From contig NW_025963802.1 in the NCBI RefSeq assembly GCF_023055435.1, forward strand, positions 8,060,001-8,124,000: a DNA stretch of 64,000 nt, read 5' to 3'. The notes beneath the pieces are model-generated. The model did not search any database and was not told the DNA's origin. It was given only the letters and a program-made list of their open reading frames with translations. This DNA comes from Haliotis rufescens (Eukaryota). Of the stretch, positions 4,330 to 62,289 are shown piece by piece. How positions within the stretch are numbered: the first letter of the stretch is position 1; each line of letters begins with the position of its first letter. The position numbers and the translations under genes were made by a program.

Positions 4330-5410
4330 TACGGAACATATTAAAATATACATAATGCGCCATCCCTCATCTTGGGATTGAGATGCTAAATTAAATTTAT
4401 ATAATAATTTAAATTCTCTTAAGAAATTGTTATTTTAATCTGAACATACATCAAATAAAGAGTTTGCAAGATTTTGATATTAGGGGCAACAGTCGTGCAA
4501 ATGAATTCGAGTGGCGTATAGCAGCCTGTGTCTACACGTAGGGGGGCTACCCACGCGTCTGCACATCGACAGCGCTCCCTTGTGACATACTCTCTGTAAT
4601 AAAGGCTTCATCCCCATAGTCTGTCTTAAAGGCGCGGTTAACCCGGGAGTTTATTTCCTGTCCTGCCATTTCTGCTATTTTGAGACACTTTATTGTCTCG
4701 TTCTAATCTTCTTTATACTTCTTGAAAAGGACGTTCTGTACAAAAGATACAATAGTTTAAATCTTGAGTCCGTTGGAACCATCAAATACGTCAGGGAGGT
4801 TTATAGCGTTCAATTTGACACGTATACGTTTGATCCAGTTGTTCTTATTAAATAAAGCTTGTCGTCTAGCCCATCGGAACACATTGTATGTGAGTGTTTG
4901 TGTCTAGGCTATTCAGTCTTGTGTAGACCGAAGAATTTGAATTTGGATATTAATAATCCCTGCTCCCGATTGGCCGAGCTTGCTACTGCTTTAGCCATGC
5001 GCGAGTAATCTAAATGCTCTGTTATCAATAGTAACTGTCAGCAATTTCAAGAAGTATATTTCCACATTAAAGACAGTCTGTCCTTGGTGTTGCCAAACGT
5101 CTACAGGAAAGAACTTTACATTTCTCCTGGTGCACAATGTTTGTTAATATCGCACCAGTTATGAAGACATTCTAAGAAAGCATTTGGGTCTGCTTCATAT
5201 TTCTGCTAGAAGTACTGATACGGTTTATAGGCTAATACAGTTCCTCATCGTCGTTCCTCATCCTATATGCAATCCATTTAAAGTAGTAATGCGTTCGTTG
5301 AATTTGTTGCCCTCTTCTCCTATTGAACCACTTAAATTCTCGGTAAGCCTCACACAACGTTTAACACTTGTATATACAGATACAATAGCTTGATACGTTT
5401 GTCCACACAT
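4330..5410 (-). pseudogene. Highly decayed non-LTR retrotransposon (LINE ORF2, post-RT region) remnant
   Basis: Interrupted minus-strand translation gives LECLHNWCDINK, KAVASSANR..GLLISK and VAPLRVDTGCY, resembling the LRIETGRY motif of CR1/L2-like ORF2 C-termini; many stops and frameshifts. Confidence 0.55.
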
Positions 5411-12833: not shown

Positions 12834-14858
12834 ATGATGGGATATGTTAGAATCATCCACACTGTCGTTTATATTTTCGCTTTAACATGTCATATTATGT
12901 TTGGCTGTAATTTCCTCACCTCAAGCGATATCAGCTCGAGTTGCCCGACCAACTGTACTTGCAACACAGAAGACGTGTACTGCAACTCGTCCTTGATCAC
13001 AGTTTTGAATGGTTCTCTGGACAAACCTGGACTCTTTCGATCCTTAATGAATAAACATATTAATATCTTGGATTTGTCATCCAATGGAATTGCAGAAATT
13101 AAGGATGGATTTTTTGAAAACTTAACTATCAATATCCACCATCTTCGTCTATCCTACAACAAAATCGCAGAGATCAATGGGCCAGAGTTCAAGGGCATTG
13201 TCGCAAAGTTTTTGTATCTATCCCATAATCATATTCATCGGATAGACCCATATGCTTTTGACGGATATGTTACCTGTGTCGAAGGTGTGGATTTATCTTA
13301 CAACAAACTGACCTACTTTGAACCTTGGCCTTTCACAAAAAATAATCAAATTTCGACATTCAACTTTAGTCACAACGACATCAGCATCTTCCGGAACGCT
13401 CCAAACCTCACCATTGTGGACATACTAAGGACATCAAAACTAGGTCTGAATAATCGGGTTGATCTCACCTTCAATAACTTCTCGGGGTGGATCCTAGAAG
13501 CCCTGGAAGATGTCTACCACTTCAATGCTGATCCAGATACAGTCATCACGATGAAACTTGGAGCAATGGGGTTTCTTCTCCAGAACAATCCTTGGCGATG
13601 CGACTGCATGCTGTACGAATTCAGACATCAGCTGCATTCAGACACATTTATGTTGTCAAAAACAATACGTGACCAATTATCCTTCAAATGTGTAACCCCG
13701 AAGAGACTCAGTGGTCAGAATGCACTGGACGTGCCAATTACTGAGTTGGTATGTCCTGTTCTTGAAGGCTGTCCCACTTCCTGCCATTGCCAGAGTGTAC
13801 CAGCGTATAAATATACAAGCGTCGTGTGCTCCACTCTTATCTCATTTCCAGACCAGATGCCCTCGGGGCCATTATATTTAAACTTAAGTTGGAATTATAT
13901 TTCAAAACTTGAATTTAGACCATACCTATCACGTGTAACATACCTGGATTTGTCCAATAATAGATTGTTTGTTATAGAAGGGGGTGCTGTTCAAGTCATG
14001 GGAAATATAGCTATGCTTAATCTTGCTTCAAACCAGCTGATGACGCTTCCGAAAGAGTTACAAGTTGTGCGATTCAGTAATGTTCATTTGGAAGGAAACA
14101 TACTCGACTGCTCTTGTGATTTGACTTGGGTTTCTGATTGGATAGACGTCACGAGTGACGATCCAGCCTATCAGCGATCAGTATGCTACAAGGATGGGTC
14201 GCCTATCAGACTATCTGCCATGAAGGACCGCATTGACTGTGTCACTGATATAGTGGTTCCCGTAACAGTAGGCGTTACCATCACCGTTGCCGTGGTAATA
14301 CTCGCTGCTGTAGCATGCAGAGTTTGGGGAAAGAAAAAGCTTCCATTTGTAATGTATTTAATAAGAGGAAGAAAAGTCCAACCTGTTGGCAAGTATGAAG
14401 ATGACGAAGCGGAGATGGACTACCATGGTTACTTGTCGTTTGATAACGACAATATGGACATTGTACTTTGGGTTAAAAATGTCCTTTTGGAAAATTTGGA
14501 AAATAATGATCAAGGCTTTCGAATCTGCTGTCCGTTACGGGATTTTGACGTTGGAGTTTCACAGGCAGAGGAAATACTGAGTTATATTGACAGAAGCAAG
14601 CGGTTTATATCCATCGTATCTGACACATACTTCAACGCTCTCAACTGGACATCTTTTGAATATGACCAGGCACGACACAAACACAAAGACCACGAATCCA
14701 ACATCATCATGATTATTTACAACAACATTGACGTTGATAATGTAAGGTCTGAGGCCGCAAAGACAGCGTTGAACAGGAAGGAGTATTTGAGAAGGGAAGA
14801 CAATTTGTTTTGGCAGAAACTTAAGTTTCTGGTCCATACCGGACATAAATTGTTTTAA
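12834..14858 (+). CDS. Toll-like receptor, multiple-cysteine-cluster (protostome/Toll-type), single coding exon, 674 aa
   Basis: Signal peptide; LRRNT CPTNCTC..VYC; LRRs (LDLSSNGI, LRLSYNKI, LYLSHNHI, VDLSYNKL); LRRCT NPWRCDC; second LRRNT CPTSCHC; further LRRs; LRRCT NILDCSC; TM VPVTVGVTITVAVVILAAVAC; TIR boxes YHGYLSF, RDFDVG, FWQKLK. Confidence 0.95.
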   Translation: MMGYVRIIHTVVYIFALTCHIMFGCNFLTSSDISSSCPTNCTCNTEDVYCNSSLITVLNGSLDKPGLFRSLMNKHINILDLSSNGIAEIKDGFFENLTINIHHLRLSYNKIAEINGPEFKGIVAKFLYLSHNHIHRIDPYAFDGYVTCVEGVDLSYNKLTYFEPWPFTKNNQISTFNFSHNDISIFRNAPNLTIVDILRTSKLGLNNRVDLTFNNFSGWILEALEDVYHFNADPDTVITMKLGAMGFLLQNNPWRCDCMLYEFRHQLHSDTFMLSKTIRDQLSFKCVTPKRLSGQNALDVPITELVCPVLEGCPTSCHCQSVPAYKYTSVVCSTLISFPDQMPSGPLYLNLSWNYISKLEFRPYLSRVTYLDLSNNRLFVIEGGAVQVMGNIAMLNLASNQLMTLPKELQVVRFSNVHLEGNILDCSCDLTWVSDWIDVTSDDPAYQRSVCYKDGSPIRLSAMKDRIDCVTDIVVPVTVGVTITVAVVILAAVACRVWGKKKLPFVMYLIRGRKVQPVGKYEDDEAEMDYHGYLSFDNDNMDIVLWVKNVLLENLENNDQGFRICCPLRDFDVGVSQAEEILSYIDRSKRFISIVSDTYFNALNWTSFEYDQARHKHKDHESNIIMIIYNNIDVDNVRSEAAKTALNRKEYLRREDNLFWQKLKFLVHTGHKLF

Positions 14859-21732: not shown

Positions 21733-22899
21733 ATGTTTCTAAGATGGCCATTTCGACCAAGACAGAGGAAGTTCTGTACACTGTTGGCCATCATTACAGG
21801 AATAGTGTTGGCACCTATACTTTACAAAAGGTTCAGATGCAACCAGTCTGGTGTTCCACCATCACAATGGAGCCACAATTCCAAAGATCCTCGGTTTGTG
21901 ACAGTCTTCCCCGACGCAGGCACCCCTGTTGGCCATACCGGTGACGGCCGGAAGCTTGTCCTCCTGTGGACATCCTTCTTCACAGGACTCGTGTGGGATG
22001 CTGACCACAACGTCTTCCAGGACTGTCCAGTGACCAACTGCGAGGTGACCACAAACAGACACCTCCTCACGTCGAGTCACGCTGTGCTTTTCAATGTCCG
22101 AGATTTATCTGACCATCTTGACAGTCCGCTACCCTCATCCCGAACTACAGATCAGATCTGGATTCTACATAACACTGAGCCTCCCTATTATATATATCTC
22201 CCACTGAGCAAGTTCAATGGTGTATTCAACTGGACTAGCTGGTACCGTAAAGACGCCACAATCTTTTCTCCATATGGGCAATGGGTACCATTAAATCCTC
22301 AAGACAAAATTTTGCATTTTAGGGAAGAAAATTACCACAGGAAGAAAGCAAAAATGGCATTGTGGGTGAGCAGCAACTGTAATGATCGCAGCAATAGAAT
22401 TGATGTTGTTCGAGAACTCCAACAGTATGTAGGAATTGACATATACGGTAAATGTGGTAATCTGGATTGTAAAAAGAGCTGTAAAGACGTGTTTGATGAC
22501 TACAAGTTCTATTTGTCATTTGAGAATGGGTATTGTCGTGACTACTTGACAGAAAAGTTCTGGCGACCTATTATTCGGGATCAGATCCCGGTTGTACGAG
22601 GCGGAGCTGACTACAAAACAATGGTGCCACCTGGGTCCTACATTAACGTGGATGACTTTGAAAGTGTCAAAGCTTTGGCTCAATATCTGCTTAAAGTTGC
22701 GAGGAATGAATCTCTGTATAATTCCTATTTTTCCTGGAAGAAGGATTACAGGCTGCTCCCTAATGGGTGGACACGTATGAACTGGTGCGGCCTCTGTGAA
22801 CGTCTGCATGATGTCAAGCAGCCAGCACAGGTGTACTCCAATCTCCGGGGATGGGTGCAGCAAGACACGTGTCGCTATGGAGATGGCTGTGCATTATAA
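21733..22899 (+). CDS. Alpha-1,3-fucosyltransferase (GT10 family), type II membrane protein, 388 aa, single coding exon
   Basis: N-terminal TM LLAIITGIVLAPIL; GT10 motifs FNWTSWYRKDATI, WVSSNC, IDIYGKCG, YKFYLSFENGYCRDYLTEKFW, PPGSYINVDDF, YNSYFSWK, WCGLC; splice acceptor at about 21691 upstream of the ATG. Confidence 0.95.
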   Translation: MFLRWPFRPRQRKFCTLLAIITGIVLAPILYKRFRCNQSGVPPSQWSHNSKDPRFVTVFPDAGTPVGHTGDGRKLVLLWTSFFTGLVWDADHNVFQDCPVTNCEVTTNRHLLTSSHAVLFNVRDLSDHLDSPLPSSRTTDQIWILHNTEPPYYIYLPLSKFNGVFNWTSWYRKDATIFSPYGQWVPLNPQDKILHFREENYHRKKAKMALWVSSNCNDRSNRIDVVRELQQYVGIDIYGKCGNLDCKKSCKDVFDDYKFYLSFENGYCRDYLTEKFWRPIIRDQIPVVRGGADYKTMVPPGSYINVDDFESVKALAQYLLKVARNESLYNSYFSWKKDYRLLPNGWTRMNWCGLCERLHDVKQPAQVYSNLRGWVQQDTCRYGDGCAL

Positions 22900-37688: not shown

Positions 37689-40600
37689 ATGGACGACAGG
37701 ATTGATCAGCGTTGTGTAATCTTACGAGGCTTCCCTCCAACCCCTAACCCCAATCAGGATATACATAGCCTTCTCAACAATCTCGCTGGGATACAGATTA
37801 AAAATATCTGTCAACTGCACACCCTGTCTACCACCAACACACCGGACTGGGTTGTACTGTGCCAGAATGTGGAAGGTCAGATTTGTTCTCAGATTTGTTA
37901 CGTGTAGGTCTTAGTTAAATGTAGCCAGACACCGTTGACCGAACAGGTTTGACAAATTTCACAAACATAGGTAATAGTTGACGCCTGTGCTTTCTCCCCG
38001 CCACAGTATGTTCGCTTATCAGCTGCTTACTCCTTGGGTAGATATCAAGTGGGGTCATACTGTGGTCGTCGCTTTTTTACACACGTCATACTATGTATCG
38101 GGCATAGTTGGTTGGTTGGTTTGTTGTTGAACGCCGCACTCAGCAATATATTCCAGCTATATGACGGCGGTCTGTAAATAATCAAGTATGGACCAGACAA
38201 TCCAGTGATTGATATCATGAGCATCTATCCACGCAATTGGGATCAATGACATGCATCAACCAAGTCAGCGAGCCTGACCACCCGATCCCGTTAGTCGGGC
38301 ATAGTGTAAAGTAAGGAATGGATTTTAGAAAGGAGTTTGGATTTGAATACTGGAATGGAATTTGGAGGGAGGGAGGGGGAGAAAATAAAATATGAAAATA
38401 TAACAAAACGCGGCGCAGACTATATTAATAAAATAAATAAACTTTAGCACTAAATTAATTTGCCGAGATGAAATACTGTAAAAGGTAAATTCGGTTAGGT
38501 TAACTAATGTTTTTAAACATTCTCACATAAAAGTGTTGTGTGAACGTATCTCTTAACATTCAAATGTTAAAATTGTTGTGTGGTTTATGTGGGCGTTTCT
38601 GCGCAATAAAAGTCATGATTTTGTAATTGAGTTGACTCGTCCATAACAACCTCTGTAACACGAGATGACACGCCAGAAGTATTAGTCCTGCATCATGGCT
38701 GTGGAATGATATCCATGCTTTCCGTAAAAAGTGACTATGCTTGTCGTAAGCGGCGAGATTTCCCGCATATGCTCCCAATTTTCATGTCTATTATCTGTAC
38801 CTTTGCTCCCAACAGCGATTGTCATATATCTCTCAATTTTGGAAGCGATCGTTCGGCCATGGCGTTTATCTCCGTTGCTCAGCTACATCTACGAGGTGCA
38901 ACTCACTTGACCATCGCTATCGCGTGGGAAATACCGGAATTTGAACACTCGTGTCGTAAACAGAAAACACAGGCGCATATCTGAGTTCAGAAAAGTCATA
39001 AGTGCCCTAGGGTCATATCACGTCACGAGACAACACTATACTGTTTCCGTCATCCGGACGGCATTGGTCACGTCATTCGACATTCGTCACTACTCGCCCC
39101 TTTCCGTGACCTACAAAAAGACTCGTCCCCCTATCGATGAATGTTATGTGCGAAAATACGACAAACCAATCAGAATGCGCGTATGATTTCAAGTTCTTTG
39201 TCAAAGAATCCCTCAGAAATAATATTTGAAACCAAAGACACAGTTAAATGTGTTCAAACATACTGTGTAATTCCGCATGTCCTGATCTGCACTAAATTGC
39301 ATCTGAAATATATATACTATACGGGGAAATATGTGTGAACCATTACACAACGAGTTGACAACTGTTTTAGGTATGCCCGTTTGCGCTAAGACGGAACCCG
39401 ATCGCAAAAATGGCCACGAGAGGGGCACGAGTCGCTATTCGGCTTGTCCCGGAATAACACGAGTTGGTCACGAATGGTCATTCGAATCTTATTCACTACT
39501 CGCCCCTTTCCGTAACATGTTTGTCCCGGAATAACACGATTTGGTCACGAATGTTATTGTGACGTGAGGTCGGAATGACGTGACACTATAAACGACGTCA
39601 TAGCTGAAAATTGTGTCGTCATTCGACAAATTGTGGTTCCGCTGCTGTTGCGACTTTCTGTCCTTATTGACCTTTTTCACACTTCGGTACTTCCGGTTTG
39701 AAAGCGAGGCTTGGAGAGCATCGCTGCTTATGCAGGTAGTGTCAACACACAGGAAGTAATGGCTCACTGTTCGGTCCCATTCTGTACGAGCGATCGGAGA
39801 AAAGCAGTTTCTTCGGAATTGTCTTTTTCCAATTTTCCTAAAGACAAGCATCTCAGGAGGAAATGGATCGCAGCCATACGTCGAGATGTGAGCAACTCCT
39901 TCCAGGTAAGCAGACTGTCTGTAGTGGTACATGTGTCGAATCACGAAAAATGTTTATCGCCAGTTCACAAGAAGTCCGACTAATTTGTTGCAAACAATGA
40001 TACCACAAAATTATATTTCACTAAAAAATGACAAGAACATCGTGTTCTACATTATTCTAGGTAAAATAATAATTGTTTACATGTAATTTCAAAATTTACT
40101 TCAATATTTCGAGCCATTCGTTACCGATGAGCTCTTGACAACTTCATCACACGATCAGTGAATGGGTTGACATAAACAGACGGCAAACCTAATGTTATGT
40201 AAAAAATGTATTATTTATTTAAATGTTGATAATCTGGGGAAAGATTTACTTGAATGCAATGCCAGTAAGTAACACTGACACAATAGTCGACCTTATACTT
40301 GAGAAATAGTTATGTAATAAATATTTGTGGTTTGGGCCCTAGGCCTATAGATCTATATTGACTAAGCATGTCTGTCTCTATGGCTGCCTGAAAAAAAATG
40401 TAAATATTATTTTGATTAAAGAATACTACCGGTTAATGAAATGTTATGGTTATGGTCGTTTTGCTATCCTGCAAGTCAGGTTTATTTTCAGCAATCCTTG
40501 TACTGAAAATGTTCATACATTAAGGTAATATACAGGTAACTTCTACCTTATGTATGCTACTTTTAACATTTTATGGCCATAGATTTTGTAATAATGGTTA

Positions 40601-43600
40601 TATACATATATGTTTTTTTACAGCTTCACTATTTTGAATAATAGAAACTTAATAACATTGTTAAATATGTTTATTGATGTTAATTTTTTTTGTTTCAGAT
40701 TGGTCGCAATATTATTTTGTATGCTCTAACCACTTCAAGCAATGTGAAATTAAAAGAGGTCTGGGAGGGCACAAAAAGAGGCTTGTTCCAGGAGCTGTTC
40801 CATGTATTTTTAGATGGAACAGTGCCAACAAGAGTAAACCAACCAACAAGGTCCAGGACAGAAGGTATTGATTTGACTATCTCTTATTATCATATCAATT
40901 ATTACATATAATATACAGTTCACTAAAATAGTTGTAATCATAATTTGTCATGACATTAATATTTTATTTAATCATTCATTTCTATTCCAGTGCATGTACT
41001 GTACAGTGTGTGACACTGTAAATGTATTATGATTATATTAATGTGTAAATATATTATTATTATAATAATGGCAGTATTGCTCCCAGACAGGTGCGCGGAA
41101 GCTATGTCCAATTTTTTAAAAGTACTGATTTAACTTCGAAATTTTACTGCATTCGCCATCTTTGTTTATTTGACTTGACTATTGTCATTGACTTATTACA
41201 TTTCTTTGTGTGAGTGTTGTCCAAAATGCACCCAATTGCTTAAAATGCAATCAAAAGTATAAAATATTTATGTGAACCCCCCAAAAGTTTTCCTCTTTTT
41301 GAGGGAAAACCTGCACACATCCCTGATGATATAATTTATGGTACCAAAATTACTATTCTAGGATATGCTTATTTACGAGGGAATATGAAATGTTCCGTGA
41401 CTTACACTTTTCAGGTTGGATAGCATGGACTGTGTACCAACAATGCCTACACCAGCTGACACTGCAGATCTGGCTTCGACTACGGCCAGTGACCCGACCC
41501 AAACGTCTACTCCCCACCTAACAGCAGATCATGATTACCATGAGAAACAACATGCCACAACTGAAGAAAAATTAGCTTCTGCACATGCAGAGATAAAACG
41601 CTTACAAAATTGTGTAAATGTTCAGTCTGCAAAATTATTTTCTATAAGGCGTTTCGCTACCAATCCTATGGACATCAATTTTTATACAGGTTTTGCTGAT
41701 TTCAATGAGCTAGATCATTTTTTTCAGTGGCTCTATCCTACTGCTTCAAAGATGCAAACCTGGACACAGTTTCAGAGAGGCACTGATGTTGACAAACTAC
41801 ACTGTGGATTTCCATGTTCTTTGTCATTGTTTGACCAATTATTTGTGTTTCTCATTAGAGTAAGACAAGGTTACCCTGAAACACACTTGGCACATCTGTT
41901 TAATGTCATTATTTCAACTATTTGTAGAATAACTATTACATGGGCCAATTATCTGTATTTTTTGCTTGGATGTGTATGCATTTGGCCCTCTAGAGAAATG
42001 ATAAATGAAAGAATGCCACCAGAATTTAAATGTTCTTATCCTGCAACACGGGTTATTGTTGACTGTACTGAATTGAAATTTCAAACGCCAACCTCTAGGG
42101 TTGTCAATTCAGAAATGTTTTCGCATTATAAAACCCACACCACTATGAAAGCATTGATTGGTATTGCTCCCCATGGGCCAATTACTTTTATCAGTTCCCT
42201 TTATGAAGGATGTATTTCTGATAAGGAAATAACCAAACAGAGTGGTCTCTTGTCATTGTTAGAGGTAGGCGATGGAGTTATGGCTGACAAAGGGTTTTTG
42301 ATTGATGATCTTCTTCACTCTACTGGTGCTCACTTGATTATCCCCCCCTTCCTCTCAAAATCAAATGATTATCAGTTTACTAGAAAGGATGTAGAAAACA
42401 CACAGGAAATATCCAGACTACGTATACATGTGGAGAGAGCTATCAGAAGAGTGAAGGAATACCATATTTTTGATGGCATAATTCCATTAACCATTGTAGG
42501 ATCTGTAAATCAAATTTGGACTGTTTGCTGTCTATTATCAAATTTCAGGGGTGATGCAAAGAGAAAACTTATGAAACATAACATGGCTAATGACTTTGGA
42601 CCATTACTTGAACCATGTCATCATGGTGTGTCATCTTGATAAATACTCATTAAACAGAAATGTGATAATTGTTTACTGGTACATTACTTCAATATGGTAT
42701 ATTATGCAATCAGTTTTGCAAGTTCTTGTGTCATAGTTGAATGGCATGGTAATGGGAGAGTGGAAACATCTTTATTTCCTTGTATTACTAATACATTCAT
42801 GCTGAAACAGTGCAACTAAAGTTTTCAAAACTGAAGTATGTCAATACCATAACAATTTGATCATTCATGAATATGTGTGTACATATCTTACCATGGTTAC
42901 ATGTCTAACACATCAATTGTCAATGTCTCATGTCAGAGAAGTAAAGAAATTCATCCTTCATGAAACACATGAATTACAATGTCACTTGGCTGATGTATGA
43001 ATCACATCATTACCCGATTACTAATGTAAAACTTCATTACCCATAAAAATAGACATTTACGGGTTGATATGTCAGTAGTCTGTCTGGTTTCCAACCGTAC
43101 AAGCTACTTGTCAAATTACTTTCCATTCATTACATCAGTCAACTTGCCCCTTACTGATAATATTGTTTAGATTTTACCAAGGATGTAATTTATGAAATAG
43201 TTGAAGTAAAACAGATCCAACCTGGTTTTCATTTCATTGCAAAATTCTTCATTGAAATATATTCTCTCCAAGTGGTAATCATCTTTGCACCAAACAAAGA
43301 AATCGACCTACCTGGCCCCAGAGAGTAACATTTGCCCCATTACTTGATGATAATGCTGGAATGTTTCTTTGAGCTTGTATGTACCTTGAGATGTTAACTT
43401 AAGGTAGTTGATATTTGATATGGATTGTGCAGTGGAACATTTGATTTCTAGCAAACCCCAAGGGTCACTCTCAGACGGGTCATATACCCGCCTGTCTGGT
43501 GAAGTGGCTAGATATGGACATGTATGGTTAATGACAATTCCACAAGCATGGACATTAAGCTTCTGCAGCCTTGAATATGCCTCAGCAGCAGAGTCCTCAT

Positions 43601-46600
43601 TCTCCATGCCATACTTCATAGCCTCAGTTTGTCTTTTGGATTTCAGTAGAGAGTCACACAAATGTTCAAAATTATCTTGTCTGGTATGCACAAATTTAAA
43701 GTTACTTGAAGATAGGCGATGTGCCTTAAGTTCCAACCACTTCTTTTGCTCACATTGATCTTGTGTTTCCTGCTCGTATAAAGCACTCTGTGTTGATGAA
43801 ACTGACAGTCCATCGAGAAATGTTTGTTGGTTTGATGTAAGTGGGCCATTTAGTTTGCTTTTAATATCAGGCGTTACAAAAGGTGGGGGAAAGGGGTGTG
43901 AATGGTTTATGATATGACTTTTGTTTATGTTTGATATATGAGGCTGTTGAAGTGAAATGGTTGAACCTTTGGGAACTTGACCAAACGCAGAAAGTACAAG
44001 AACTATATCATTCATATTCGGAATGATTGATGAGAACTGATTAGCCTTAGGATTTTGTCCACAAATGTTTTTTAGAGTGGAAGAAAATTCATTATGGTTG
44101 ATGTCTTTGGGCAAGGGATTGTATAGAGTAGACCTCAAACCATCAAGGCATCTCTTTTTTAAAGGGACAGGTTTCGCATTGGAAGATGATGAGTGAGTAA
44201 GTGTAGGAGAAGCAGAGGAAGTGTTAGTAGAGGCAGCAGATGTAGTTGAGGCAGCAGATGTAGTAGAGGCAGCAGATGAAGTAGGGGCAGTAGAAGAGGT
44301 AGTATCTGTTGATGACTTAGATGTAACAGATCCACTGGCAGGTGTTTTTATTTTTTGAACAGTGATTTGGTCTACCTTTTTGGCAAAAAGGCCTTTACTT
44401 CTTTGTGGAACGTGCCATGTCTGTGGCAGCGATGTTTTTGACAATGCAGGTGGCACTGTTTTTAAGTCAAGGGATTGATAGTGTTGTAACAAATACAGTA
44501 AACCAATCACGTGATTACATTTGCCCTGGCCAGATTCACAATTACATGAAGTCTGCTCAATGAGAGTTGAATCGGTTGTATTGATCCAGATCTGAAAAAT
44601 ATCACTGGTAGTCTATTGTTATTATTGTTTTATGTGGTAATATCTGCTCAGTGTAATAGCACTTTTTTCTTATGAGGATTAATTGGCCTTGTCCAATTAT
44701 AACCATGACTTGAAAATAATTATGCAGGGAACCCAGTTATCTTTTCTAAGCCTTGAGCATACTAAAGGTTTCTTCACTAAATTGATTGTTCTTCAGACTA
44801 TTGATTCAAGGTGTGGGTTTTCAATAAATGAGAATTTTAATTATCTTTCCATCAAAAAGTACTTTATTTTCACAGCCACAATTGTTTTAAATGTATCTTA
44901 ACGAGAAAATATGAAACAATTTATTGAGTACAAAAACACAATTTCCTTTTGGTTTTATTCACCTTCATGTGATAAGGGGTTTCATTCTTTTTTATTGACT
45001 TGAAGTTTCGAGCTCTGCAAACTGCTCCATCAGGTTGAGGAGATACTATAATCATAAAAGTAATTGAATATCCTGCCTGTTATAATCATGATAATATCAA
45101 TGTATATAATTGATTTAGAACAGGTCTGTAAAATAAACCCTTGTATACAGTTTATATCATTCTTTGTTGTATTTAATTTGCCTGCATGTGTTTACTTTTA
45201 GTCTGACTCATGTTACCATAAAATGGTGAGTTATTACACATTTACTTCTTTGGATTTATGTGAATGTTTATTGGTCACACAGCAGATCATATGGACACAG
45301 TCATATTACTCAAATGTGGAGGGCAATAGAACATTATCTGAGCTCCCTGGTAATGTTTAACACTGAACATGAATGGTACACTATGTACAGTGAAAAACAA
45401 AATTGATGGAAAACTGTGAAACGAATCTTTACTTAAGGTGAGTTGCTGCAGGTTCTTAGGCTTATGATGATAAAGGGACTTTTTCACAAGTTCAACACGT
45501 TTTCTTTGAGGTTACAACAAATGTGAGTAGAAATTTATGTTTTGATAAAATATGGTATCTGCTTCAGCCTAACAATAGTTATGTGACATATGAGAAATTC
45601 ATACAAATCATACAGTGATCAACGCAGCAATATATATTTTTTTATCTTTAAATTTCAGTTTTACACATACTGTTATATTACTCATTTCATGTTAAAAACA
45701 ACACCCAATATTTTTTTTATGATTTTTCATTGCTACTACAGTAGGAAGCTAACACGTTTTTTTGTTTTGGAAAATATTTATACTTCTGGTGGAATGTAAA
45801 CAATGAAAAAAATCCGATTATTCATTTCCAAAGCTGTTCTTATTTGGACTCATATCAATAAGAAAACAAATCGAAACAACTTCACAGCCAAATTAAAGTG
45901 TTGTTTATTGTTTACTAAACAATGTGATGTAATGATTATCACATCAACAATACTAGGTGTCACATGTATTATAAAAACCGCAAGATGTGTGTTTTTGGAG
46001 GACTTTGATAAGATAATATTTAACGGAAAATTCACTTCCGGGTTGCCGACACAACCAAGCCCCTACCTTCAACATCGAATATGTATCCCTCGCAAAAATT
46101 GCCATAGGCTCTTTTTAATACTTTTCTGGGGACTTTTGCAATTTGGTTTACCCAAGTTTTAACAAAACCGGGTCTTATGACCGGGACACAGTTTAAATTT
46201 TTGGTCCACACAGTCTTCGCGCTCAAATTGGTGGAAGCCATTTCGATACTGATTCCTTGACACGGAAGCACCGAATGCTCTCCAAGCCTCGTTTTCGATC
46301 CAAGATGGCGAAAGTGTGAAAAAGGTTAATAGGTAAACACTAAAATTCGTCTCTGTATGTAGACATCTTCTTCGGTAATAAAAAGAACATTATATTCGTG
46401 TTCATATTCGCTCTCGCTCGGGAAATACCGGAATTTAGACATATGTCGTAGACATAGTATGACATGAACACTCATATAATATCCTCTATATATGTCCCCA
46501 CACAAAACACAGGTGCTGTGCCGGAGGGACATATATGTCCTACACAAAAGTCAAGTTACACGGTGCGGGCCTTACACTAATCGATGTTACTGCCCTCCTA

Positions 46601-55600: not shown

Positions 55601-58600
55601 TGAGGGTTGAGGGCGTCCCATTGTCAGTTGCCTCGGAGACAATTTCAGATTACTTTGAAACCCGGAAATGTGGAAATGATACGAGTTCAGAGGTAGTCAA
55701 AGTGGAAGGATTAGATCAACGTGGATGCTACCTTGTCCATCTCGCTGACCACAAAGGTGAGGAAGAACAAAGGGCTATAGTACATGGTCCGCTTAAGATC
55801 CGGAGCCGTGAATTTACAGTATAAATTACTGATATGAGAAATAATGCTTGCCATGGATTGCATAGTGATGGCTTCAATAATATTGATACTACATGCATAC
55901 ATATAGAACAAGGCATGAAAGAAACATAATGATATATTGAATGTTTGCCTGTTTTTTTCTCAGTTGTTGAGCAGATCAGCGAGAGAGTGCATACACTTGG
56001 AGAAGCAAATATAAAAGTCTACCTCCATCACAAATGTGTCGGATGGCAGTCACCTGAGTCCACTGACACAACACCAGCTCAGATGTCAGGCGCCATACCC
56101 CTTGAAAGTATTGACCAACTTGTACCACGGTTTCTGAAGAAGTCACCCAAAGTACTCAGAAACATTCAAGAAAAACTAGGTGGTTACGGATTGTCATTAA
56201 AGTTGAATGAGTCCAACCAGTTGTTCGTATTTCGTCAAGTCGGGAGCGAGTGTGGAACTACAACTGCTGATGGAATGGATTACAAGAGTTCAGCTAGGTC
56301 GGTCATCAGTGAATTTGTTCTTCATGTTTTGGTTCAGATTCCCATGGAATTAAAGGGCAACATTGATACAATGTTAATGCAGGTCAATGTTGATGAAACA
56401 GAGGTTAGGATGTACACTGACAAGGAGGTCGTAGCAATTGTCGGCATTCCTACGAAAGCTAATGAAGTCAAGGCAGAAGTTGAGAAACATATTGCGCATG
56501 GAATATCTTCAAAAGGCCCCCCAAAACCCGAAATTGTGAAACCTTTAGTACCTCTTAAAGCCAAATTTCTTCGAGAGTGCGGTTTTAAGGAGATGATAAA
56601 ACAATTCCCTGGAGTGAGTGCGAGATTTGATGCAAATGGTGTCCATCTGTCTGGTCCAGAAACCTCTGTGAAAGAAGCAACGATTAAAATGTATGAACTG
56701 GTGAATGGAACGCAAACTTCAGAGATAGAACATGTTTCCAAACAGCAACTAACTGAGCTTCAGAAGAAGGCAGTTGAGGATGATCTGAGGAACGAACTGA
56801 AGAAAATTGGCATTGTAGCATCATGGCATGCAAAAGAGTCATCACTAGAAGTAATTTCAACAACTCCAGAAAAAGTTGGACAAGTCGGTGAAATGATACT
56901 TAATACTGTGGTGGAAAGAGTTGTTCCCCTTGAAGGAAAAATGCAGTTACTAATCCAATCAGAATCGTGGGAAAGCCTACGGAAATCATTGATTTATCAT
57001 TTGCCTGACACCTTCAGTATTCATAATCTCCAAGACAAGAATTATCTACTCATTGTGGGGTTAAAGGATGATGTGGAATGTGTTTATGCTGAAGTCACAA
57101 TGTTTTTGTCCTCCAACACCGTAGATGAAACACGTCTCTCGTTTACTAAAGGGCAGCACAGATTCCTTCTGGCCCACTACAAAGAAGAAGTTGCAACAAT
57201 TGCTAAAGATTTGAAGGACTATCATGTCCGGATTATATACCAGGAGAATGGAACCGAGTTCACTATTAATGGCTCAAAAGAAGGAATCGACAAATGCCGA
57301 AAGGAACTGACCTTCCTGGCCGACAAAGTAATGAGCCACAAGGAACTGTTACAGAAGGCTGGCATGGCCAGAATGCTCAAAACAGGACAAGGAGGACACA
57401 TTATTTCTCATGTAGAAAAGGTTGAAAGATGTATCATAGAGGTTGTTAATGAAGAGAAGGGGGAGGATGAAAACAAACACGAAGGACAAGGTAATGCAGC
57501 CACTCAAGAGCCAGTATCCACCATAGTGGCTGTCTCAAACATAGCAGGTGGAAGGAAGATCTATGTAAGAGAAGGAGACATTACGACCATGAAAGTCAGT
57601 GCCATTGTCAATGCTGCTAATGAGAGATTAGATCACTGTGCAGGTCTTGCCAAAGTCATCGTTGACAAAGGTAATACTTTTTTTTTTTAAAGTAATAAAT
57701 ATATATTATATATATATCCAAAATGTTTCCACATTAAAACTGGATATTTTCACGGATTATGTTTACAGTTAATGAAGTGTTATACAAACGTTTTAATATG
57801 CCAAGTGCGATTTACCATCAGAATCCATAATTGGTAGAGAAGAAAATATATTTTTGAACATATTTCAGCTGGAAAAGACGTGCAAGATGAGTGTAACGGA
57901 CACGTGAATTCGTATGGTGCAGTTCTGGATGGAGATGCTGTGTTGTCGAAGCCAGGAAGACTGAAAGGTAGCTGTGATTTCATTGTGCATGCAGTGGGTC
58001 CAAGATGGGAAGGAGGAAAGAAGAGAGAAAAGGAAAAATTGAAAGAAGCTGTCACCCGGAGTCTGGAGCTTACAGACAGTAGACAGGGGAGCTCTATTGC
58101 AATACCTGCTTTGAGTGCTGGAATCTTTGGATATCCCAAAGATGCTGCTACAAGGGTTATAACTACTGCAGTAAGAGACTACTTTGTGAAACATAAATCC
58201 AGTACAATCAAGGACGTTTATTTGTGTACAGTGAATGGCAAAACTGTGGACAGCTTTGTAAAATCGCTGCAAGATGTCTTAGGGGCATCAAATGTTCACA
58301 TACAACCACGTTTACAAGGCGGGGCAGGTGCTCAGATGCAACAATCATCCCCCAGAACACAGAGAAGAGTTTCTGGTATGTCAACTTGAAATATAATAAC
58401 CAACTGCATATGATAATATGTAAAAAGTTGAAATAGTGAATGGCATCATTATCCGAGGCCTATTTTTTCTCTGGTTTGACTACGTGGCAAGACAAGCTAT
58501 GAGTGTTTGTACTGCAGTATTAGTGCTACAACTGTTTTGCACCATGGACCCAAGGCAATAACGAAGTCCCATGTTTTAATAGTTATACCACATTCATATA

Positions 58601-60877: not shown

Positions 60878-62289
60878 TCTTGTGTTCCAAAAGAATATGA
60901 GCAGAAAGGAATTTTACCGAAGACCAGAAATTGAAGGATTAGAAAACATTGAAAAACTTTTTTTGTCATGTAACTGTCATGATATCAGCAGACCATATCA
61001 GGTGTCACACAGACACCCTAGGGAGTGCAGAGACAGAAACGTCAGTAACGTGGGTATGATCCACGGACATTACAAGTCGTTGAATGCTTTTCTGAGGCAA
61101 ACGGATCCATTCTTCATGAAGTGCGGCTTCAAGTCCAGGGAGATTTCGAACTGGGAGATCACGATGTCTGATTTTCCGGCCAAGAATGTCCCAGAGATGC
61201 TCAATCGGATTAAGATCCGGACTACAGGCCGGCCAAGGAAGATTGGCAATAGCTTCTTGACGCAAATAAGGCAAAACTGCCCGAGATCTGTGTGGTCTAG
61301 CATTGTCGTCGATGTAAACAGGTCTTGTCTGAAGAGGATGGTTGTCTAAATGAGGGACTACCACTGGTTGAAGAACGGCATCTTGGTATTGTTGGCCATT
61401 CAGGTTTCCACGAATTGTCACCAGCGGAAGTTTGCAGCTGAAGGAAACACAACCCCATATCATGACAGACCCCCCGCCACATGCTATGGTCTTCTGGATA
61501 TTCCTTGGTGCAAAACGAGTGTTATGTTGCCTCCAAACGCGTATTCGACCATCAACAGTTCGTAGCACCATTCGACACTCGTCAGACCAATGGATCCTTC
61601 TCCAGTTGGCCAAGTTCCATCGACTACGGGCACGACACCATATCAGACGATTCCGCTTGTGCTTTCAGTCAGTTGAGGACGTTTTACTGGTCTTCTGGCG
61701 TTATAACCAGGCGACGCCTTACGGTCATCGTCGAGAGTCTGTGATGGGTAATCCACTGCAGTCTTAAATCTGTTGAAGTGGCAAATGGATTTCATCTGAC
61801 TATCCTGAAAAGACGTCTATCCTCTCTGTTAGAGGTCTTTCTTGGCCTACCAGACCTATGCCTGTCATTGGCATCATTGGATTGACCATGTTTGACAATC
61901 AAACGAGTGATAACACTGTGATGACGACCCATTTGTCTTGCAAAGGCCCTGCATGACATGCCAGCATTTGACATGCCTATCACCTGCCATCTTTCAGCGT
62001 TCGTTAACTTTCTCCTCACCATGGCTGATTTTCAACCTCTATTGGAAGGGGAATCTCACACAGGAGCAAAATGCAACCACGTGTCTGAAACTTGAATTTC
62101 ACTATTTATAGGTTAGGGGAACTGCAGCAACACGAAAGGCACGCTTTTCTTGTGGTATCTGGACAAACTTGGGTTCACGAAACTATGGAAGCCTAATTCA
62201 GTCATACATCATCATATTTCGTATTTCTGATTCCCACACGTGAAATCAAGAGACTGTGAATATGGTGGCGCTTAATTTTTGTGCATGTG
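60878..62289 (-). mobile_element. Tc1 (DD34E) transposon, degenerate, in a PARP14-like intron
   Basis: HTH MVRRKLTNAERWQVIGM...RSGRPRKTS (62022-61792); WSDE, DDNARPH and SPDLNPIEHLW with 34 residues between D and E. Stops, frameshifts and a C-terminal deletion before GSYPRY*. Ends are approximate and the TIRs poorly matched. Confidence 0.85.

What the first reader, a model, noticed from the sequence alone, without database searches (positions are those of the whole stretch)
39668..46328. Complete two-component transposon pairing a THAP-DDE transposase with a SWIM-YqaJ exonuclease
Seen: inverted termini TGACCTTTTTCACACTT / TAACCTTTTTCACACTT, AT on both flanks, and two convergent three-exon genes. 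Established: a THAP-HTH-DDE transposase plus a YqaJ exonuclease and an AT target is the organisation reported for ISL2EU elements (PIF/Harbinger-related PHIS group), whereas classical Harbingers use a Myb/SANT accessory protein. To my knowledge the exonuclease's role is untested. Inference: lambda-exonuclease-family enzymes resect 5' ends for single-strand annealing. The element may therefore encode its own resection activity for donor-site repair or target processing, coupling cut-and-paste with recombination. This copy is close enough to intact to reconstruct both partners. It is the best candidate for a poorly described system in this window, although the superfamily itself is not new.
Basis: partly seen in the sequence, partly recalled or inferred. 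Interest (0 to 1): 0.8.

Follow-up and report, generated by a model that had tools for sequence, protein, structure and literature searches.

The report
Decayed ISL2EU transposon with exonuclease gene
This is a broken copy of an already described kind of two-gene jumping DNA (ISL2EU), whose second gene encodes a lambda-exonuclease-like nuclease whose role nobody has tested; it is ordinary for its kind.

Summary
Window 39668-46328 is one 6661-bp DNA transposon. It has 17-nt inverted termini, AT on both flanks and two convergent three-exon genes. One gene encodes a THAP/HTH/DDE_Tnp_4 transposase. The other encodes a SWIM-type domain joined to a lambda-exonuclease (YqaJ) domain.

- **Family:** six other near-full copies lie in the same 1.33-Gb genome, 96-99% alike. 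A roughly 2.1-kb non-coding family shares the terminal 52-53 nt.
- **Target:** paralogous empty sites show a single AT where filled sites have two.
- **Transcription:** contigs of three runs that the tool only guesses to be RNA carry both transposase introns removed. No splice of the nuclease gene was seen.
- **Classification:** the organisation matches the published ISL2EU group of the PHIS superfamily. It is a new family of a known kind, with a T|AT|A target context and TG termini instead of the usual A|AT|T and GG.
- **State of this copy:** there are more than two lesions. They are a 1-nt loss in THAP exon 2, a 14-nt loss that removes the normal transposase stop, and a premature stop in the nuclease. 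None of the seven copies has both genes open.
- **Nuclease role:** it remains untested. Conserved catalytic and 5'-phosphate-binding residues fit a resecting exonuclease.

The scan noted similar elements elsewhere in this genome (s1-814442, s1-810354).

The parts
39666..39667 (.). Left copy of the duplicated target AT, preceded by T
   Evidence: Among 44 distinct ends, the outside bases are -1 T in 43, -2 A in 43 and -3 T in 38.
39668..39684 (+). Left 17-nt terminal inverted repeat
   Evidence: Identical in the other copies.
39700..39721 (+). Left 22-nt subterminal box, inverted copy at the right end. It lies within the 53 nt shared with the non-autonomous family. Likely a protein-binding site or core promoter (inference).
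39759..39905 (+). Transposase exon 1 (start codon, first half of THAP)
   Evidence: Pfam THAP 3.8e-9. Its last 27 nt are seen as the loose end joined to 40696/40699 in X15 and X17.
40699..40864 (+). Transposase exon 2 (second half of THAP). One base fewer between 40714 and 40715 than in the 5 other copies that cover the site, which shifts the frame.
41068..41327 (.). High-copy short repeat nested in transposase intron 2, present in all seven aligned copies
   Evidence: bin depth 5904 in DNA run X1.
41415..42639 (+). Transposase exon 3: HTH_Tnp_4 and DDE_Tnp_4 with the full D..K..D..D..P..R(3)E signature. A 14-nt loss at 42550 removes the stop used by 4 of the 6 other copies and lengthens the reading frame.
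   Evidence: Joint 40864/41415 with GT..AG in X15, X17 and X18, absent from DNA run X1.
43167..44591 (-). Nuclease gene exon 3: end of the SWIM motif, Ser/Ala/Thr-rich linker, conserved middle region and lambda-exonuclease (YqaJ) domain. Premature stop at 43308-43310, where 6 of 6 other copies read on.
44225..44294 (.). 18-nt tandem repeat (3.9 copies) encoding the Ser/Ala/Thr linker. Copy number varies between copies.
44963..45045 (-). Nuclease gene exon 2 (strand region ahead of the SWIM motif)
   Evidence: Aligns to P0001 residues 107-128, E 3e-6. GT/AG kept in 7 of 7 copies. X17 contig 20 ends exactly at 45045.
46067..46241 (-). Nuclease gene exon 1 (start codon 87 nt inside the right tip)
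   Evidence: Aligns to P0045 residues 17-66, E 8e-13. Open in 5 of 7 copies.
46275..46296 (-). Right 22-nt subterminal box (21 of 22 identical to the left one, inverted)
46312..46328 (-). Right 17-nt terminal inverted repeat. It has one substitution at its second base that the other copies lack.
46329..46330 (.). Right copy of the duplicated target AT, followed by A

Best explanation
Window 39668-46328 is a dead copy of a recently amplified family of ISL2EU-group (PHIS superfamily) cut-and-paste DNA transposons in an animal genome.

Shown:
- It is a unit bounded by 17-nt inverted termini plus an inverted 22-nt box.
- It inserts at T|AT|A and duplicates the AT.
- It carries a spliced gene for a THAP-HTH-DDE transposase and a convergent gene for a SWIM-type domain fused to a lambda-exonuclease-fold nuclease.
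- Only the terminal 52-53 nt are needed in cis, because a non-coding family shares just those.

Inferred:
- The THAP domain (or the SWIM-domain protein) binds the subterminal box.
- The DDE domain cuts and joins with a 2-nt stagger.
- The second protein is an active 5'-phosphate-dependent 5'->3' exonuclease. It loads on the double-strand ends left by excision and resects them. Repair then goes by homology from the sister or homologue, which restores the element at the donor site and gives a net gain of copies.

My odds are about 0.95 for the identity and about 0.4 for this specific role of the nuclease.
For: Anatomy and domains.

One unit that moves:
- Six further near-full copies are 96.2-99.0% alike and all hold DNA of both genes.
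- At 44 distinct ends the flank reads TAT before the tip.
- Filled site L046 reads ..CACAT-AT-[element]-AT-ATTTCTCC, against the empty paralogue in the window..CACAC-AT-ATTTCCCC.
- Filled site L043 reads GGT-AT-[element]-8 nt-AT-ACGG, against GGT-AT-ACGG in 6 of 6 paralogues.

Non-autonomous relatives: 27 of 40 scored places match only the first 53 nt, out of 205 first-look candidates. Two full copies of 2084 and 3565 bp are AT-flanked and have no ORF of 60 aa or more inside the element apart from one of 61 aa.

Transposase: it matches the published signature D(19-29)K(29)D(18-40)D(11-19)P(18-28)R(3)E. The intron 2 joint 40864/41415 (GT..AG) is in 3 of 3 runs guessed to be RNA and absent from the DNA run. 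The end of exon 1 is joined to exon 2 in 2 of those runs.

Nuclease:
- 2399 relatives at E<=1e-3.
- The profile hits LHK-Exo at 1.6e-29 and lambda exonuclease at 1.7e-8.
- Model pLDDT 78.7; Foldseek TM 0.75 to 3syy. VIA Z 16.8 and 16.6 for a full-length relative.
- Residues kept: D366 in 60/61, E382 in 56/60, K384 in 58/60, E332 in 63/65.
- In the printed alignment the nearly invariant Arg of W-x3-R aligns with Arg28 of lambda exonuclease, and S-P-D and E-x-K align with its S-P-D and E-L-K. The roles of those lambda residues are from my own knowledge.

Linkage across diverged families in this genome: 20 of 22 nuclease-like hits at 45% identity or less have a DDE hit within 8 kb, and 15 of these are convergent.

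Literature: the ISL2EU definition is.
Against: - The target context is T|AT|A and the tips start TG. PMC4482050 reports A|AT|T and 'usually GG' for ISL2EU.
- I could not place the transposase in a tree with reference ISL2EU, Spy and PIF sequences.
- No splice joint of the nuclease gene appeared in any of 3 runs guessed to be RNA. Their contigs run unspliced through 44592-44962. In X18 one contig runs from transposase exon 3 to the right end, so that coverage may be read-through or antisense RNA.
- The X15 contigs carry the window copy's own lesions, so transcription here says nothing about activity.
- Variable sites among the 7 copies show no codon-position bias (57/65/74, p 0.33). Coding sites are as variable as non-coding ones (6.3% against 6.8%).
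- The two empty-site comparisons are paralogous, 76-93% alike and AT-rich. One paralogue (L024) has one extra T, and L043 has 8 filler bases.
- Nothing here tests nuclease activity or its role.
Confidence: 0.85

Rival explanations
1. The nuclease is an obligatory second catalytic subunit. The DDE transposase would cut only the 3' strands, and the PD-(D/E)xK-fold protein would remove or cut the 5' strands, as TnsA does beside TnsB in Tn7. ISL2EU would then have a heteromeric transposase.
For: The nuclease gene stays linked to the DDE gene across diverged families: 20 of 22. The active-site residues are kept in 56-63 of 60-65 relatives. The fold class, restriction-endonuclease-like, is the same as TnsA's (my own knowledge).
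Against: The closest structures are processive exonucleases, not site-specific endonucleases. The Arg that reads a free 5'-phosphate end is kept, which presupposes an existing end. Related PIF/Harbinger elements manage with a non-catalytic Myb-like partner, and Spy elements with the transposase alone.
Confidence: 0.12
2. The second protein mainly works as the Harbinger Myb-like protein does. It would bind the subterminal box through its SWIM-type domain and recruit or import the transposase, with the nuclease activity dispensable for transposition.
For: An N-terminal domain with a high-confidence model in relative P0108 aligns to the SWIM region of ZSWIM8: Z 9.6, rmsd 2.6, 100 residues. The zinc ligands are kept in 40-45 of 45-46 relatives. 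PMC4482050 itself calls it a DNA-binding protein.
Against: The transposase already has THAP and HTH DNA-binding domains. Long-term conservation of the catalytic residues argues that nuclease activity is selected. SWIM domains also serve protein contacts.
Confidence: 0.15
3. The two genes are neighbours by accident: two nested or adjacent elements, or a host gene beside a transposon, rather than one unit.
For: None found. It was considered because the genes are convergent and no transcript evidence for the second gene was obtained.
Against: All six other near-full copies hold both genes in the same order between the same termini. Both start codons lie about 90 nt inside mirror-image ends. Linkage recurs in diverged families.
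Confidence: 0.02

Closest known systems
ISL2EU group of the PHIS (PIF/Harbinger-ISL2EU-Spy) superfamily of DNA transposons (PMC4482050, PMC4122938; passages read)
   Same: A transposase with THAP, HTH and DDE domains, a second ORF with a YqaJ exonuclease domain, a 2-bp AT duplication, inverted termini within the reported 6-259 bp range, and an animal host. At 6.7 kb it is near the reported mean of about 4.8 kb once introns are counted.
   Different: The target context is T|AT|A, not A|AT|T. The tips start TG, not the usual GG. The passages I read do not mention the SWIM-type domain of the second protein or the bipartite ends (17 nt + 15-nt spacer + 22-nt box).
PIF/Harbinger elements
   Same: Related DDE_Tnp_4 transposase, two-gene organisation, AT-rich target.
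   Different: Harbinger has a 3-bp TWA duplication and a Myb/SANT partner without a catalytic domain. Its transposase lacks THAP.
Spy elements
   Same: Sister clade of transposases; invertebrate hosts.
   Different: Spy has one gene, makes no duplication and inserts in AAATTT. Here there is an AT duplication and a second gene.
Lambda exonuclease / LHK-Exo / herpesvirus alkaline nucleases (PDB 1avq, 3syy, 2w45)
   Same: The fold of the C-terminal ~220 residues and the residues aligned with the active site and the 5'-phosphate pocket.
   Different: It is fused to a SWIM-type domain and a conserved middle region. No annealing-protein partner is encoded in the element. Oligomeric state and activity are unknown.
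Tn7 TnsA/TnsB (works-like comparison only; my own knowledge)
   Same: A DDE transposase paired with a restriction-endonuclease-fold nuclease in one element.
   Different: TnsA is a site-specific 5'-end endonuclease. It is not a member of the lambda-exonuclease family, and no relation by sequence was found or sought.

Membership tests
ISL2EU (PHIS superfamily) | DDE transposase of the IS5/PIF type with the shared signature D..K..D..D..P..R(3)E | tested here: met
   Pfam DDE_Tnp_4 2e-38. The published spacing pattern matches the exon 3 translation.
ISL2EU (PHIS superfamily) | THAP zinc finger at the N-terminus of the transposase, plus HTH | tested here: met
   THAP 3.8e-9 and 4.6e-6 on exons 1 and 2; HTH_Tnp_4 1.2e-11. 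In this copy the THAP frame is broken by a 1-nt loss.
ISL2EU (PHIS superfamily) | Second ORF with a YqaJ exonuclease domain | tested here: met
   YqaJ 2.9e-14; profile, fold and residues.
ISL2EU (PHIS superfamily) | 2-bp AT target-site duplication | tested here: met
   AT at 43 of 44 ends. A single AT at paralogous empty sites for two insertions. Caveats: one extra T in one paralogue, and 8 filler bases at one junction.
ISL2EU (PHIS superfamily) | Target context A|AT|T; tips usually GG (reported as usual, not absolute) | tested here: not met
   T at -3 in 38 of 44 ends, giving T|AT|A. The tips read TG in all copies.
ISL2EU (PHIS superfamily) | Transposase falls in the ISL2EU clade and has the six group-specific residues (Y, L, S, I, H, R) of PMC4122938 fig. 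4 | not tested
   No reference ISL2EU, Spy or PIF sequences were on hand. Figures and supplements are not held.
Lambda-exonuclease / YqaJ family (second protein) | PD-(D/E)xK core with Asp, Glu-x-Lys and an N-terminal Arg for the 5' phosphate | tested here: met
   S-P-D, E-I-K and W-x3-R are present in the window copy, kept in relatives, and aligned with lambda exonuclease.
Lambda-exonuclease / YqaJ family (second protein) | 5'->3' exonuclease activity; ring-shaped trimer | not testable with these tools
   Needs protein work.
SWIM zinc finger (second protein) | C-x-C-xn-C-x-H motif recognised by the Pfam model | tested here: inconclusive
   The motif C-N-C-x6-C-N-H is present and kept in 40-45 of 45-46 relatives. 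The Pfam score of 15.0 bits is below the 19.6 cut-off. The N-terminal domain of relative P0108 aligns to ZSWIM8 with Z 9.6.

The most novel reading that the evidence does not exclude
The lambda-exonuclease-type protein is an integral part of the ISL2EU transposition reaction rather than an accessory. It would either process the 5' strands at the element's ends, making a two-enzyme transposase as in Tn7, or channel the excision break into homology-directed repair through its SWIM-type domain, so that a cut-and-paste element behaves as a replicative one. The mirror-image 22-nt boxes would be its loading or binding sites.
Probability: 0.15. Interest if true: 0.7.

Novelty: new member of a known kind. 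Interest (0 to 1): 0.3.

Why it matters
Mostly it does not change anything. The element belongs to a group described years ago, and this copy is dead.

Its modest value is as material for an old open question: why ISL2EU elements, alone among PHIS transposons, carry a nuclease. This family is young, with copies 96-99% alike. It has a numerous non-autonomous partner family that defines the cis requirement as the terminal 52-53 nt. It is transcribed and spliced in runs under three organism labels. Its second protein keeps every residue expected of a 5'-phosphate-dependent resecting exonuclease.

The T|AT|A target and TG tips widen the described range of the group slightly.

Tried and rejected
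- **Extra exon.** I first took 45440-45505 (minus strand) for a further exon of the nuclease gene. Relatives P0045 and P0001 run straight from the exon 1 sequence into the exon 2 sequence, so I dropped it.
- **Alternative boundaries.** I considered a TA duplication with tips one base further out, and no duplication with AT as part of the tips. Both need 2-3-nt gaps against the empty paralogues. The AT duplication needs none against the window paralogue.
- **False empty site.** The right flank of L062 has an inverted paralogue whose likeness stops exactly at the element's end. Its other side does not match the left flank, so it is not an empty site.
- **Local flank search.** A search of all flanks against everything fetched gave only one usable case, L046.
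- **Selection test.** A codon-position test on the seven copies gave no signal. Support for function comes only from distant relatives.
- **PDB search with one sequence.** It returned only chance hits to the Ser/Ala/Thr linker. The profile search was needed.
- **Allelic empty site of the window copy.** Not sought. The element with flanks exceeds 6000 letters, and the single read-laying run went to splicing.
- **Literature.** Three searches found no paper testing the nuclease, judged from listings and abstract starts: 'ISL2EU' (46 papers, 25 listed), 'YqaJ'+'transposon'+'Harbinger' (3 papers), and 'YqaJ'+'transposable element' (27 papers, 25 listed). I read passages of PMC4482050, PMC4122938 and PMC9179366. 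Their supplements hold the family tables and target logos and were closed. They may already list T|AT|A families.

Full report
**What is there.**
- The stretch 39668-46328 (6661 bp) starts with TGACCTTTTTCACACTT. It ends with the reverse complement of the same 17-mer, with one substitution at its second base. These are the only two matches in the 64-kb window at up to 2 mismatches. Chance would give 0.03, and 0 of 100 shuffles reached 2.
- The repeat finder extends the arms to 57 nt at 79% complementarity. Each end is bipartite: the 17-nt tip, 15 unrelated bases, then a 22-nt box (39700-39721 and 46275-46296, 21 of 22 alike, inverted).
- AT lies directly outside both tips.
- Both start codons sit about 90 nt inside their tip, at 39759 (91 nt in) and 46241 (87 nt in).

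**The two genes.**
- *Pfam, exon by exon.* THAP is split over plus-strand exons 1 and 2 (E 3.8e-9 and 4.6e-6). HTH_Tnp_4 (1.2e-11) and DDE_Tnp_4 (2e-38) lie in exon 3.
- *Transposase signature.* The exon 3 translation matches the spacing signature published for PHIS transposases, D(19-29)K(29)D(18-40)D(11-19)P(18-28)R(3)E (passage; match).
- *Nuclease gene.* On the minus strand the long last exon gives YqaJ (2.9e-14). SWIM scores only 15.0 bits against a cut-off of 19.6.
- *Its exons.* Exon 1 (46241-46067) aligns to residues 17-66 of database relative P0045 (E 8e-13). Exon 2 (45045-44963) aligns to residues 107-128 of P0001 (E 3e-6). In those proteins the two stretches are contiguous. The phases fit (and the sequence). 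All eight GT and AG dinucleotides are kept in 7 of 7 copies, except one site deleted in L006.
- Two convergent three-exon genes is therefore correct.

**Reads.**
- Twenty runs from 8 studies under four coded organism labels hold 41-68% of the stretch's sampled words.
- I laid three small runs that the tool guesses to be RNA (X15, X17, X18, three labels) and one DNA run (X1) on 40301-46300.
- The joint 40864/41415, with GT..AG ends, is present in 3 of the 3 guessed RNA runs and absent from X1. In X15 and X17 a 27-nt loose end before 40696 equals the end of exon 1. Both transposase introns are therefore removed, and the runs do contain RNA.
- No joint of the nuclease gene appeared in any run. 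Contigs run unspliced through 44592-44962. In X18 one contig runs from 41413 to the end of the stretch laid. That coverage may be read-through or antisense RNA, or merged convergent transcripts, and contigs cannot tell which. One X17 contig ends exactly at 45045, the predicted start of exon 2. That is a weak hint only.
- The X15 contigs are nearly identical to the window copy: 0 other letters and 0 gaps over the spliced 417 nt, and 4 differences in 2701 nt. They share its premature stop and its 14-nt loss. So a dead copy is what is transcribed there.

**Lesions of this copy.** Compared with six other copies:
- Exon 2 of the transposase has one base fewer between 40714 and 40715 than the 5 copies that cover the site. 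This breaks the THAP frame.
- A 14-nt loss at 42550 removes the stop that 4 of the 6 other copies use (…SNFRGSLF) and adds about 30 residues.
- A 22-nt loss follows at 42590.
- The nuclease gene has a stop at 43308-43310, where 6 of 6 other copies read on.

Every copy has its own damage. One keeps the three transposase exons open, and another keeps nuclease exon 3 open. None of the 7 has both genes open.

**It is a family that moved.**
- The own genome (1.33 Gb, 615 contigs) holds six more near-full copies. The window copy is 97.1-98.1% identical to them, and all pairs are 96.2-99.0% identical. All contain both genes in the same order.
- At up to 3 mismatches, both tips were found in 4 of the 6. 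One has an altered right end, and one has its first 241 nt 22 kb away.
- A second, non-coding family shares only the first 53 and last 52 nt. Of 40 scored places for the first 123 nt, 13 match at full length and 27 match only positions 1-53 at 97-98%, out of 205 first-look candidates. Two complete members measure 2084 and 3565 bp and are AT-flanked.
- Variable sites among the seven copies show no codon-position bias (57, 65 and 74 at positions 1 to 3; p 0.33). They are as frequent in exons (6.3%) as outside them (6.8%). The copies have simply decayed since insertion.

**Target and duplication.**
- I counted 44 distinct ends. An end was counted only if it matched the 17-mer with up to 2 mismatches and had the box within 70 nt. 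Ends closer than 12 nt to a locus edge and duplicate loci were dropped.
- The outside bases read T at -1 in 43, A at -2 in 43, and T at -3 in 38. That is TAT|element|ATA.
- Two insertions lie in repeats with empty paralogues.
  - L046 reads …CACAT-AT-[element]-AT-ATTTCTCC. The paralogue inside this window (around 39331) reads …CACAC-AT-ATTTCCCC. A second paralogue (L024) has one extra T.
  - L043, a 782-bp internally deleted copy, reads …GGT-AT-[element]-TTTATATT-AT-ACGG. Six of six paralogues read …GGT-AT-ACGG. The 8 filler bases are unexplained.
- A 2-bp AT duplication at T|AT|A fits best. A TA duplication or no duplication would each need gaps.

**The second protein.**
- *Relatives.* A search of 1.84 billion representatives found 2399 relatives at E<=1e-3 and 445 at E<=1e-10. 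Atlas clusters of a full-length relative are eukaryotic, most often cnidarian or arthropod, with YqaJ in 97-100% of members.
- *Solved structures.* A 65-sequence profile hits the alkaline exonuclease LHK-Exo (1.6e-29), mimivirus R354 (2e-12) and lambda exonuclease (1.7e-8).
- *Models.* The model of the open exon 3 product of L004 has pLDDT 78.7, and above 90 over the last ~230 residues. It matches 3syy (TM 0.75) and lambda exonuclease (TM 0.65). The model of the full-length relative P0108 (pLDDT 84.6) gives Z 16.8 and 16.6 to those two. Its N-terminal domain (39-156) aligns to the SWIM region of ZSWIM8 at Z 9.6, rmsd 2.6, over 100 residues.
- *Conserved residues.* The Asp of S-P-D is kept in 60 of 61, the Glu and Lys of E-I-K in 56 and 58 of 60, and the Glu of G-x-x-x-E in 63 of 65. 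The four SWIM ligands are kept in 40-45 of 45-46.
- *Alignment with lambda exonuclease.* In the printed alignment, W-x3-R aligns with W24…R28 of lambda exonuclease, and S-P-D and E-x-K align with its S-P-D and E-L-K. To my knowledge these are its 5'-phosphate pocket and its active site.
- All of these residues are present in the window copy upstream of its premature stop.

**Linkage beyond this family.** Among 22 nuclease-like matches at 45% identity or less in this genome, 20 have a DDE-transposase match within 8 kb. Of these, 15 are convergent as here, 4 are divergent about 350-900 bp apart, and 1 is tandem. Only the best candidates are scored, so the two without a neighbour prove nothing.

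**Comparison with what is known.**
- PMC4482050 (passages) defines ISL2EU by four features: AT duplications with target A|AT|T, a transposase with DDE, HTH and THAP, a second ORF with a YqaJ exonuclease domain, and tips that are usually GG. It lists 25 families in 14 animal species, and it states that the function of the additional ORFs is unknown.
- PMC4122938 and PMC9179366 (passages) say the same of the organisation.
- The element meets the four defining features I could test. It departs in the flanking context (T|AT|A) and in the first bases of the tips (TG). Placement in the transposase tree was not tested.
- It is a new family of a known kind.

**How it most likely works.**
- *Shown:* the cis ends, the duplication, the coding capacity, the splicing of the transposase gene, and the conservation of the nuclease active site.
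- *Inferred:* the transposase binds the ends through THAP/HTH and cuts and joins with a 2-nt stagger. The second protein is a 5'-phosphate-dependent 5'->3' exonuclease that resects the double-strand ends made by excision and so favours homology-directed repair, which restores the donor copy.
- *Rivals:* it is an obligatory strand-processing subunit (about 0.12), or it is mainly a DNA-binding or recruiting cofactor (about 0.15).
- None of these can be told apart without experiments.

**Limits.**
- The kind 'RNA' of the runs is the tool's guess, supported only by the spliced joints.
- The empty sites are paralogous, not allelic.

Noticed in passing
L061:101-2184 and L062:101-3665 (own genome, C101 and C24); 27 further places: A non-coding family of about 2.1 kb shares only the first 53 and last 52 nt with the autonomous element. 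It is AT-flanked, with 205 first-look candidates. It is the likely non-autonomous partner of this family.
   Followed up: partly
window 41068-41327: A ~260-bp high-copy repeat sits inside transposase intron 2 in all seven aligned copies. Many 80-87% matches lie across the genome, and depth in the 41101-41300 bin of the DNA run is 5904.
   Followed up: no
window 44225-44294; own genome C2:2517211-2518749 and C583:19038357-19039847: The 18-nt repeat that encodes the Ser/Ala/Thr linker of the nuclease protein has 3.9 copies here. In two other copies of the element it has grown into arrays of more than 1 kb.
   Followed up: no
window 42442-46300: Contigs of runs guessed to be RNA cover the nuclease gene with its introns unspliced. 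In run X18 one contig runs from transposase exon 3 to the right end. This could be read-through of the transposase transcript, antisense to the nuclease gene.
   Followed up: partly
L043:2282-2289 (own genome C79): Eight extra bases (TTTATATT) lie between the right tip of an old deleted copy and the duplicated AT. They are absent from six empty paralogues.
   Followed up: partly
L062:3666-3965 and 4511-4810: The right flank of a non-autonomous copy is repeated in inverted orientation 850 bp away. The likeness stops exactly at the element's end. It may be a rearrangement tied to the element.
   Followed up: partly
own genome C2:32729444-32731268, C334:24761517-24763271, C117:69971-71795, C556:23024644-23026469: In four loci a shorter YqaJ-like frame (250-277 aa open) and a DDE transposase lie head to head, about 350-900 bp apart. 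This architecture differs from the convergent one.
   Followed up: no
own genome C1:43410504-43439044: Six matches to a transposase 45-46% identical to this one lie at a regular spacing of about 5.56 kb. Five have open frames of 306 aa, and the sixth (303 aa) holds a TGA stop. This is a tandem array that includes a PHIS-type transposase gene.
   Followed up: no
own genome C594:8549758-8550105: A YqaJ-like match (44% identity) lies within a 494-aa open frame, with no DDE match within 8 kb among the scored hits.
   Followed up: no
window 12834-14858, 21733-22899, 55945-57690, 61005-61613: Long single-exon frames: a Toll-like receptor type (LRR plus TIR), a family-10 fucosyltransferase, a frame with a PARP14-type KH domain, and a DDE_3 (Tc1/mariner-like) transposase fragment.
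   Followed up: no
window 38168-38297 and 14 other places in the window: A ~130-bp repeat occurs at 15 places in the window, 72-98% alike, and in many fetched loci. A further repeat at 39083-39476 serves elsewhere (L046) as a target of the non-autonomous family.
   Followed up: partly
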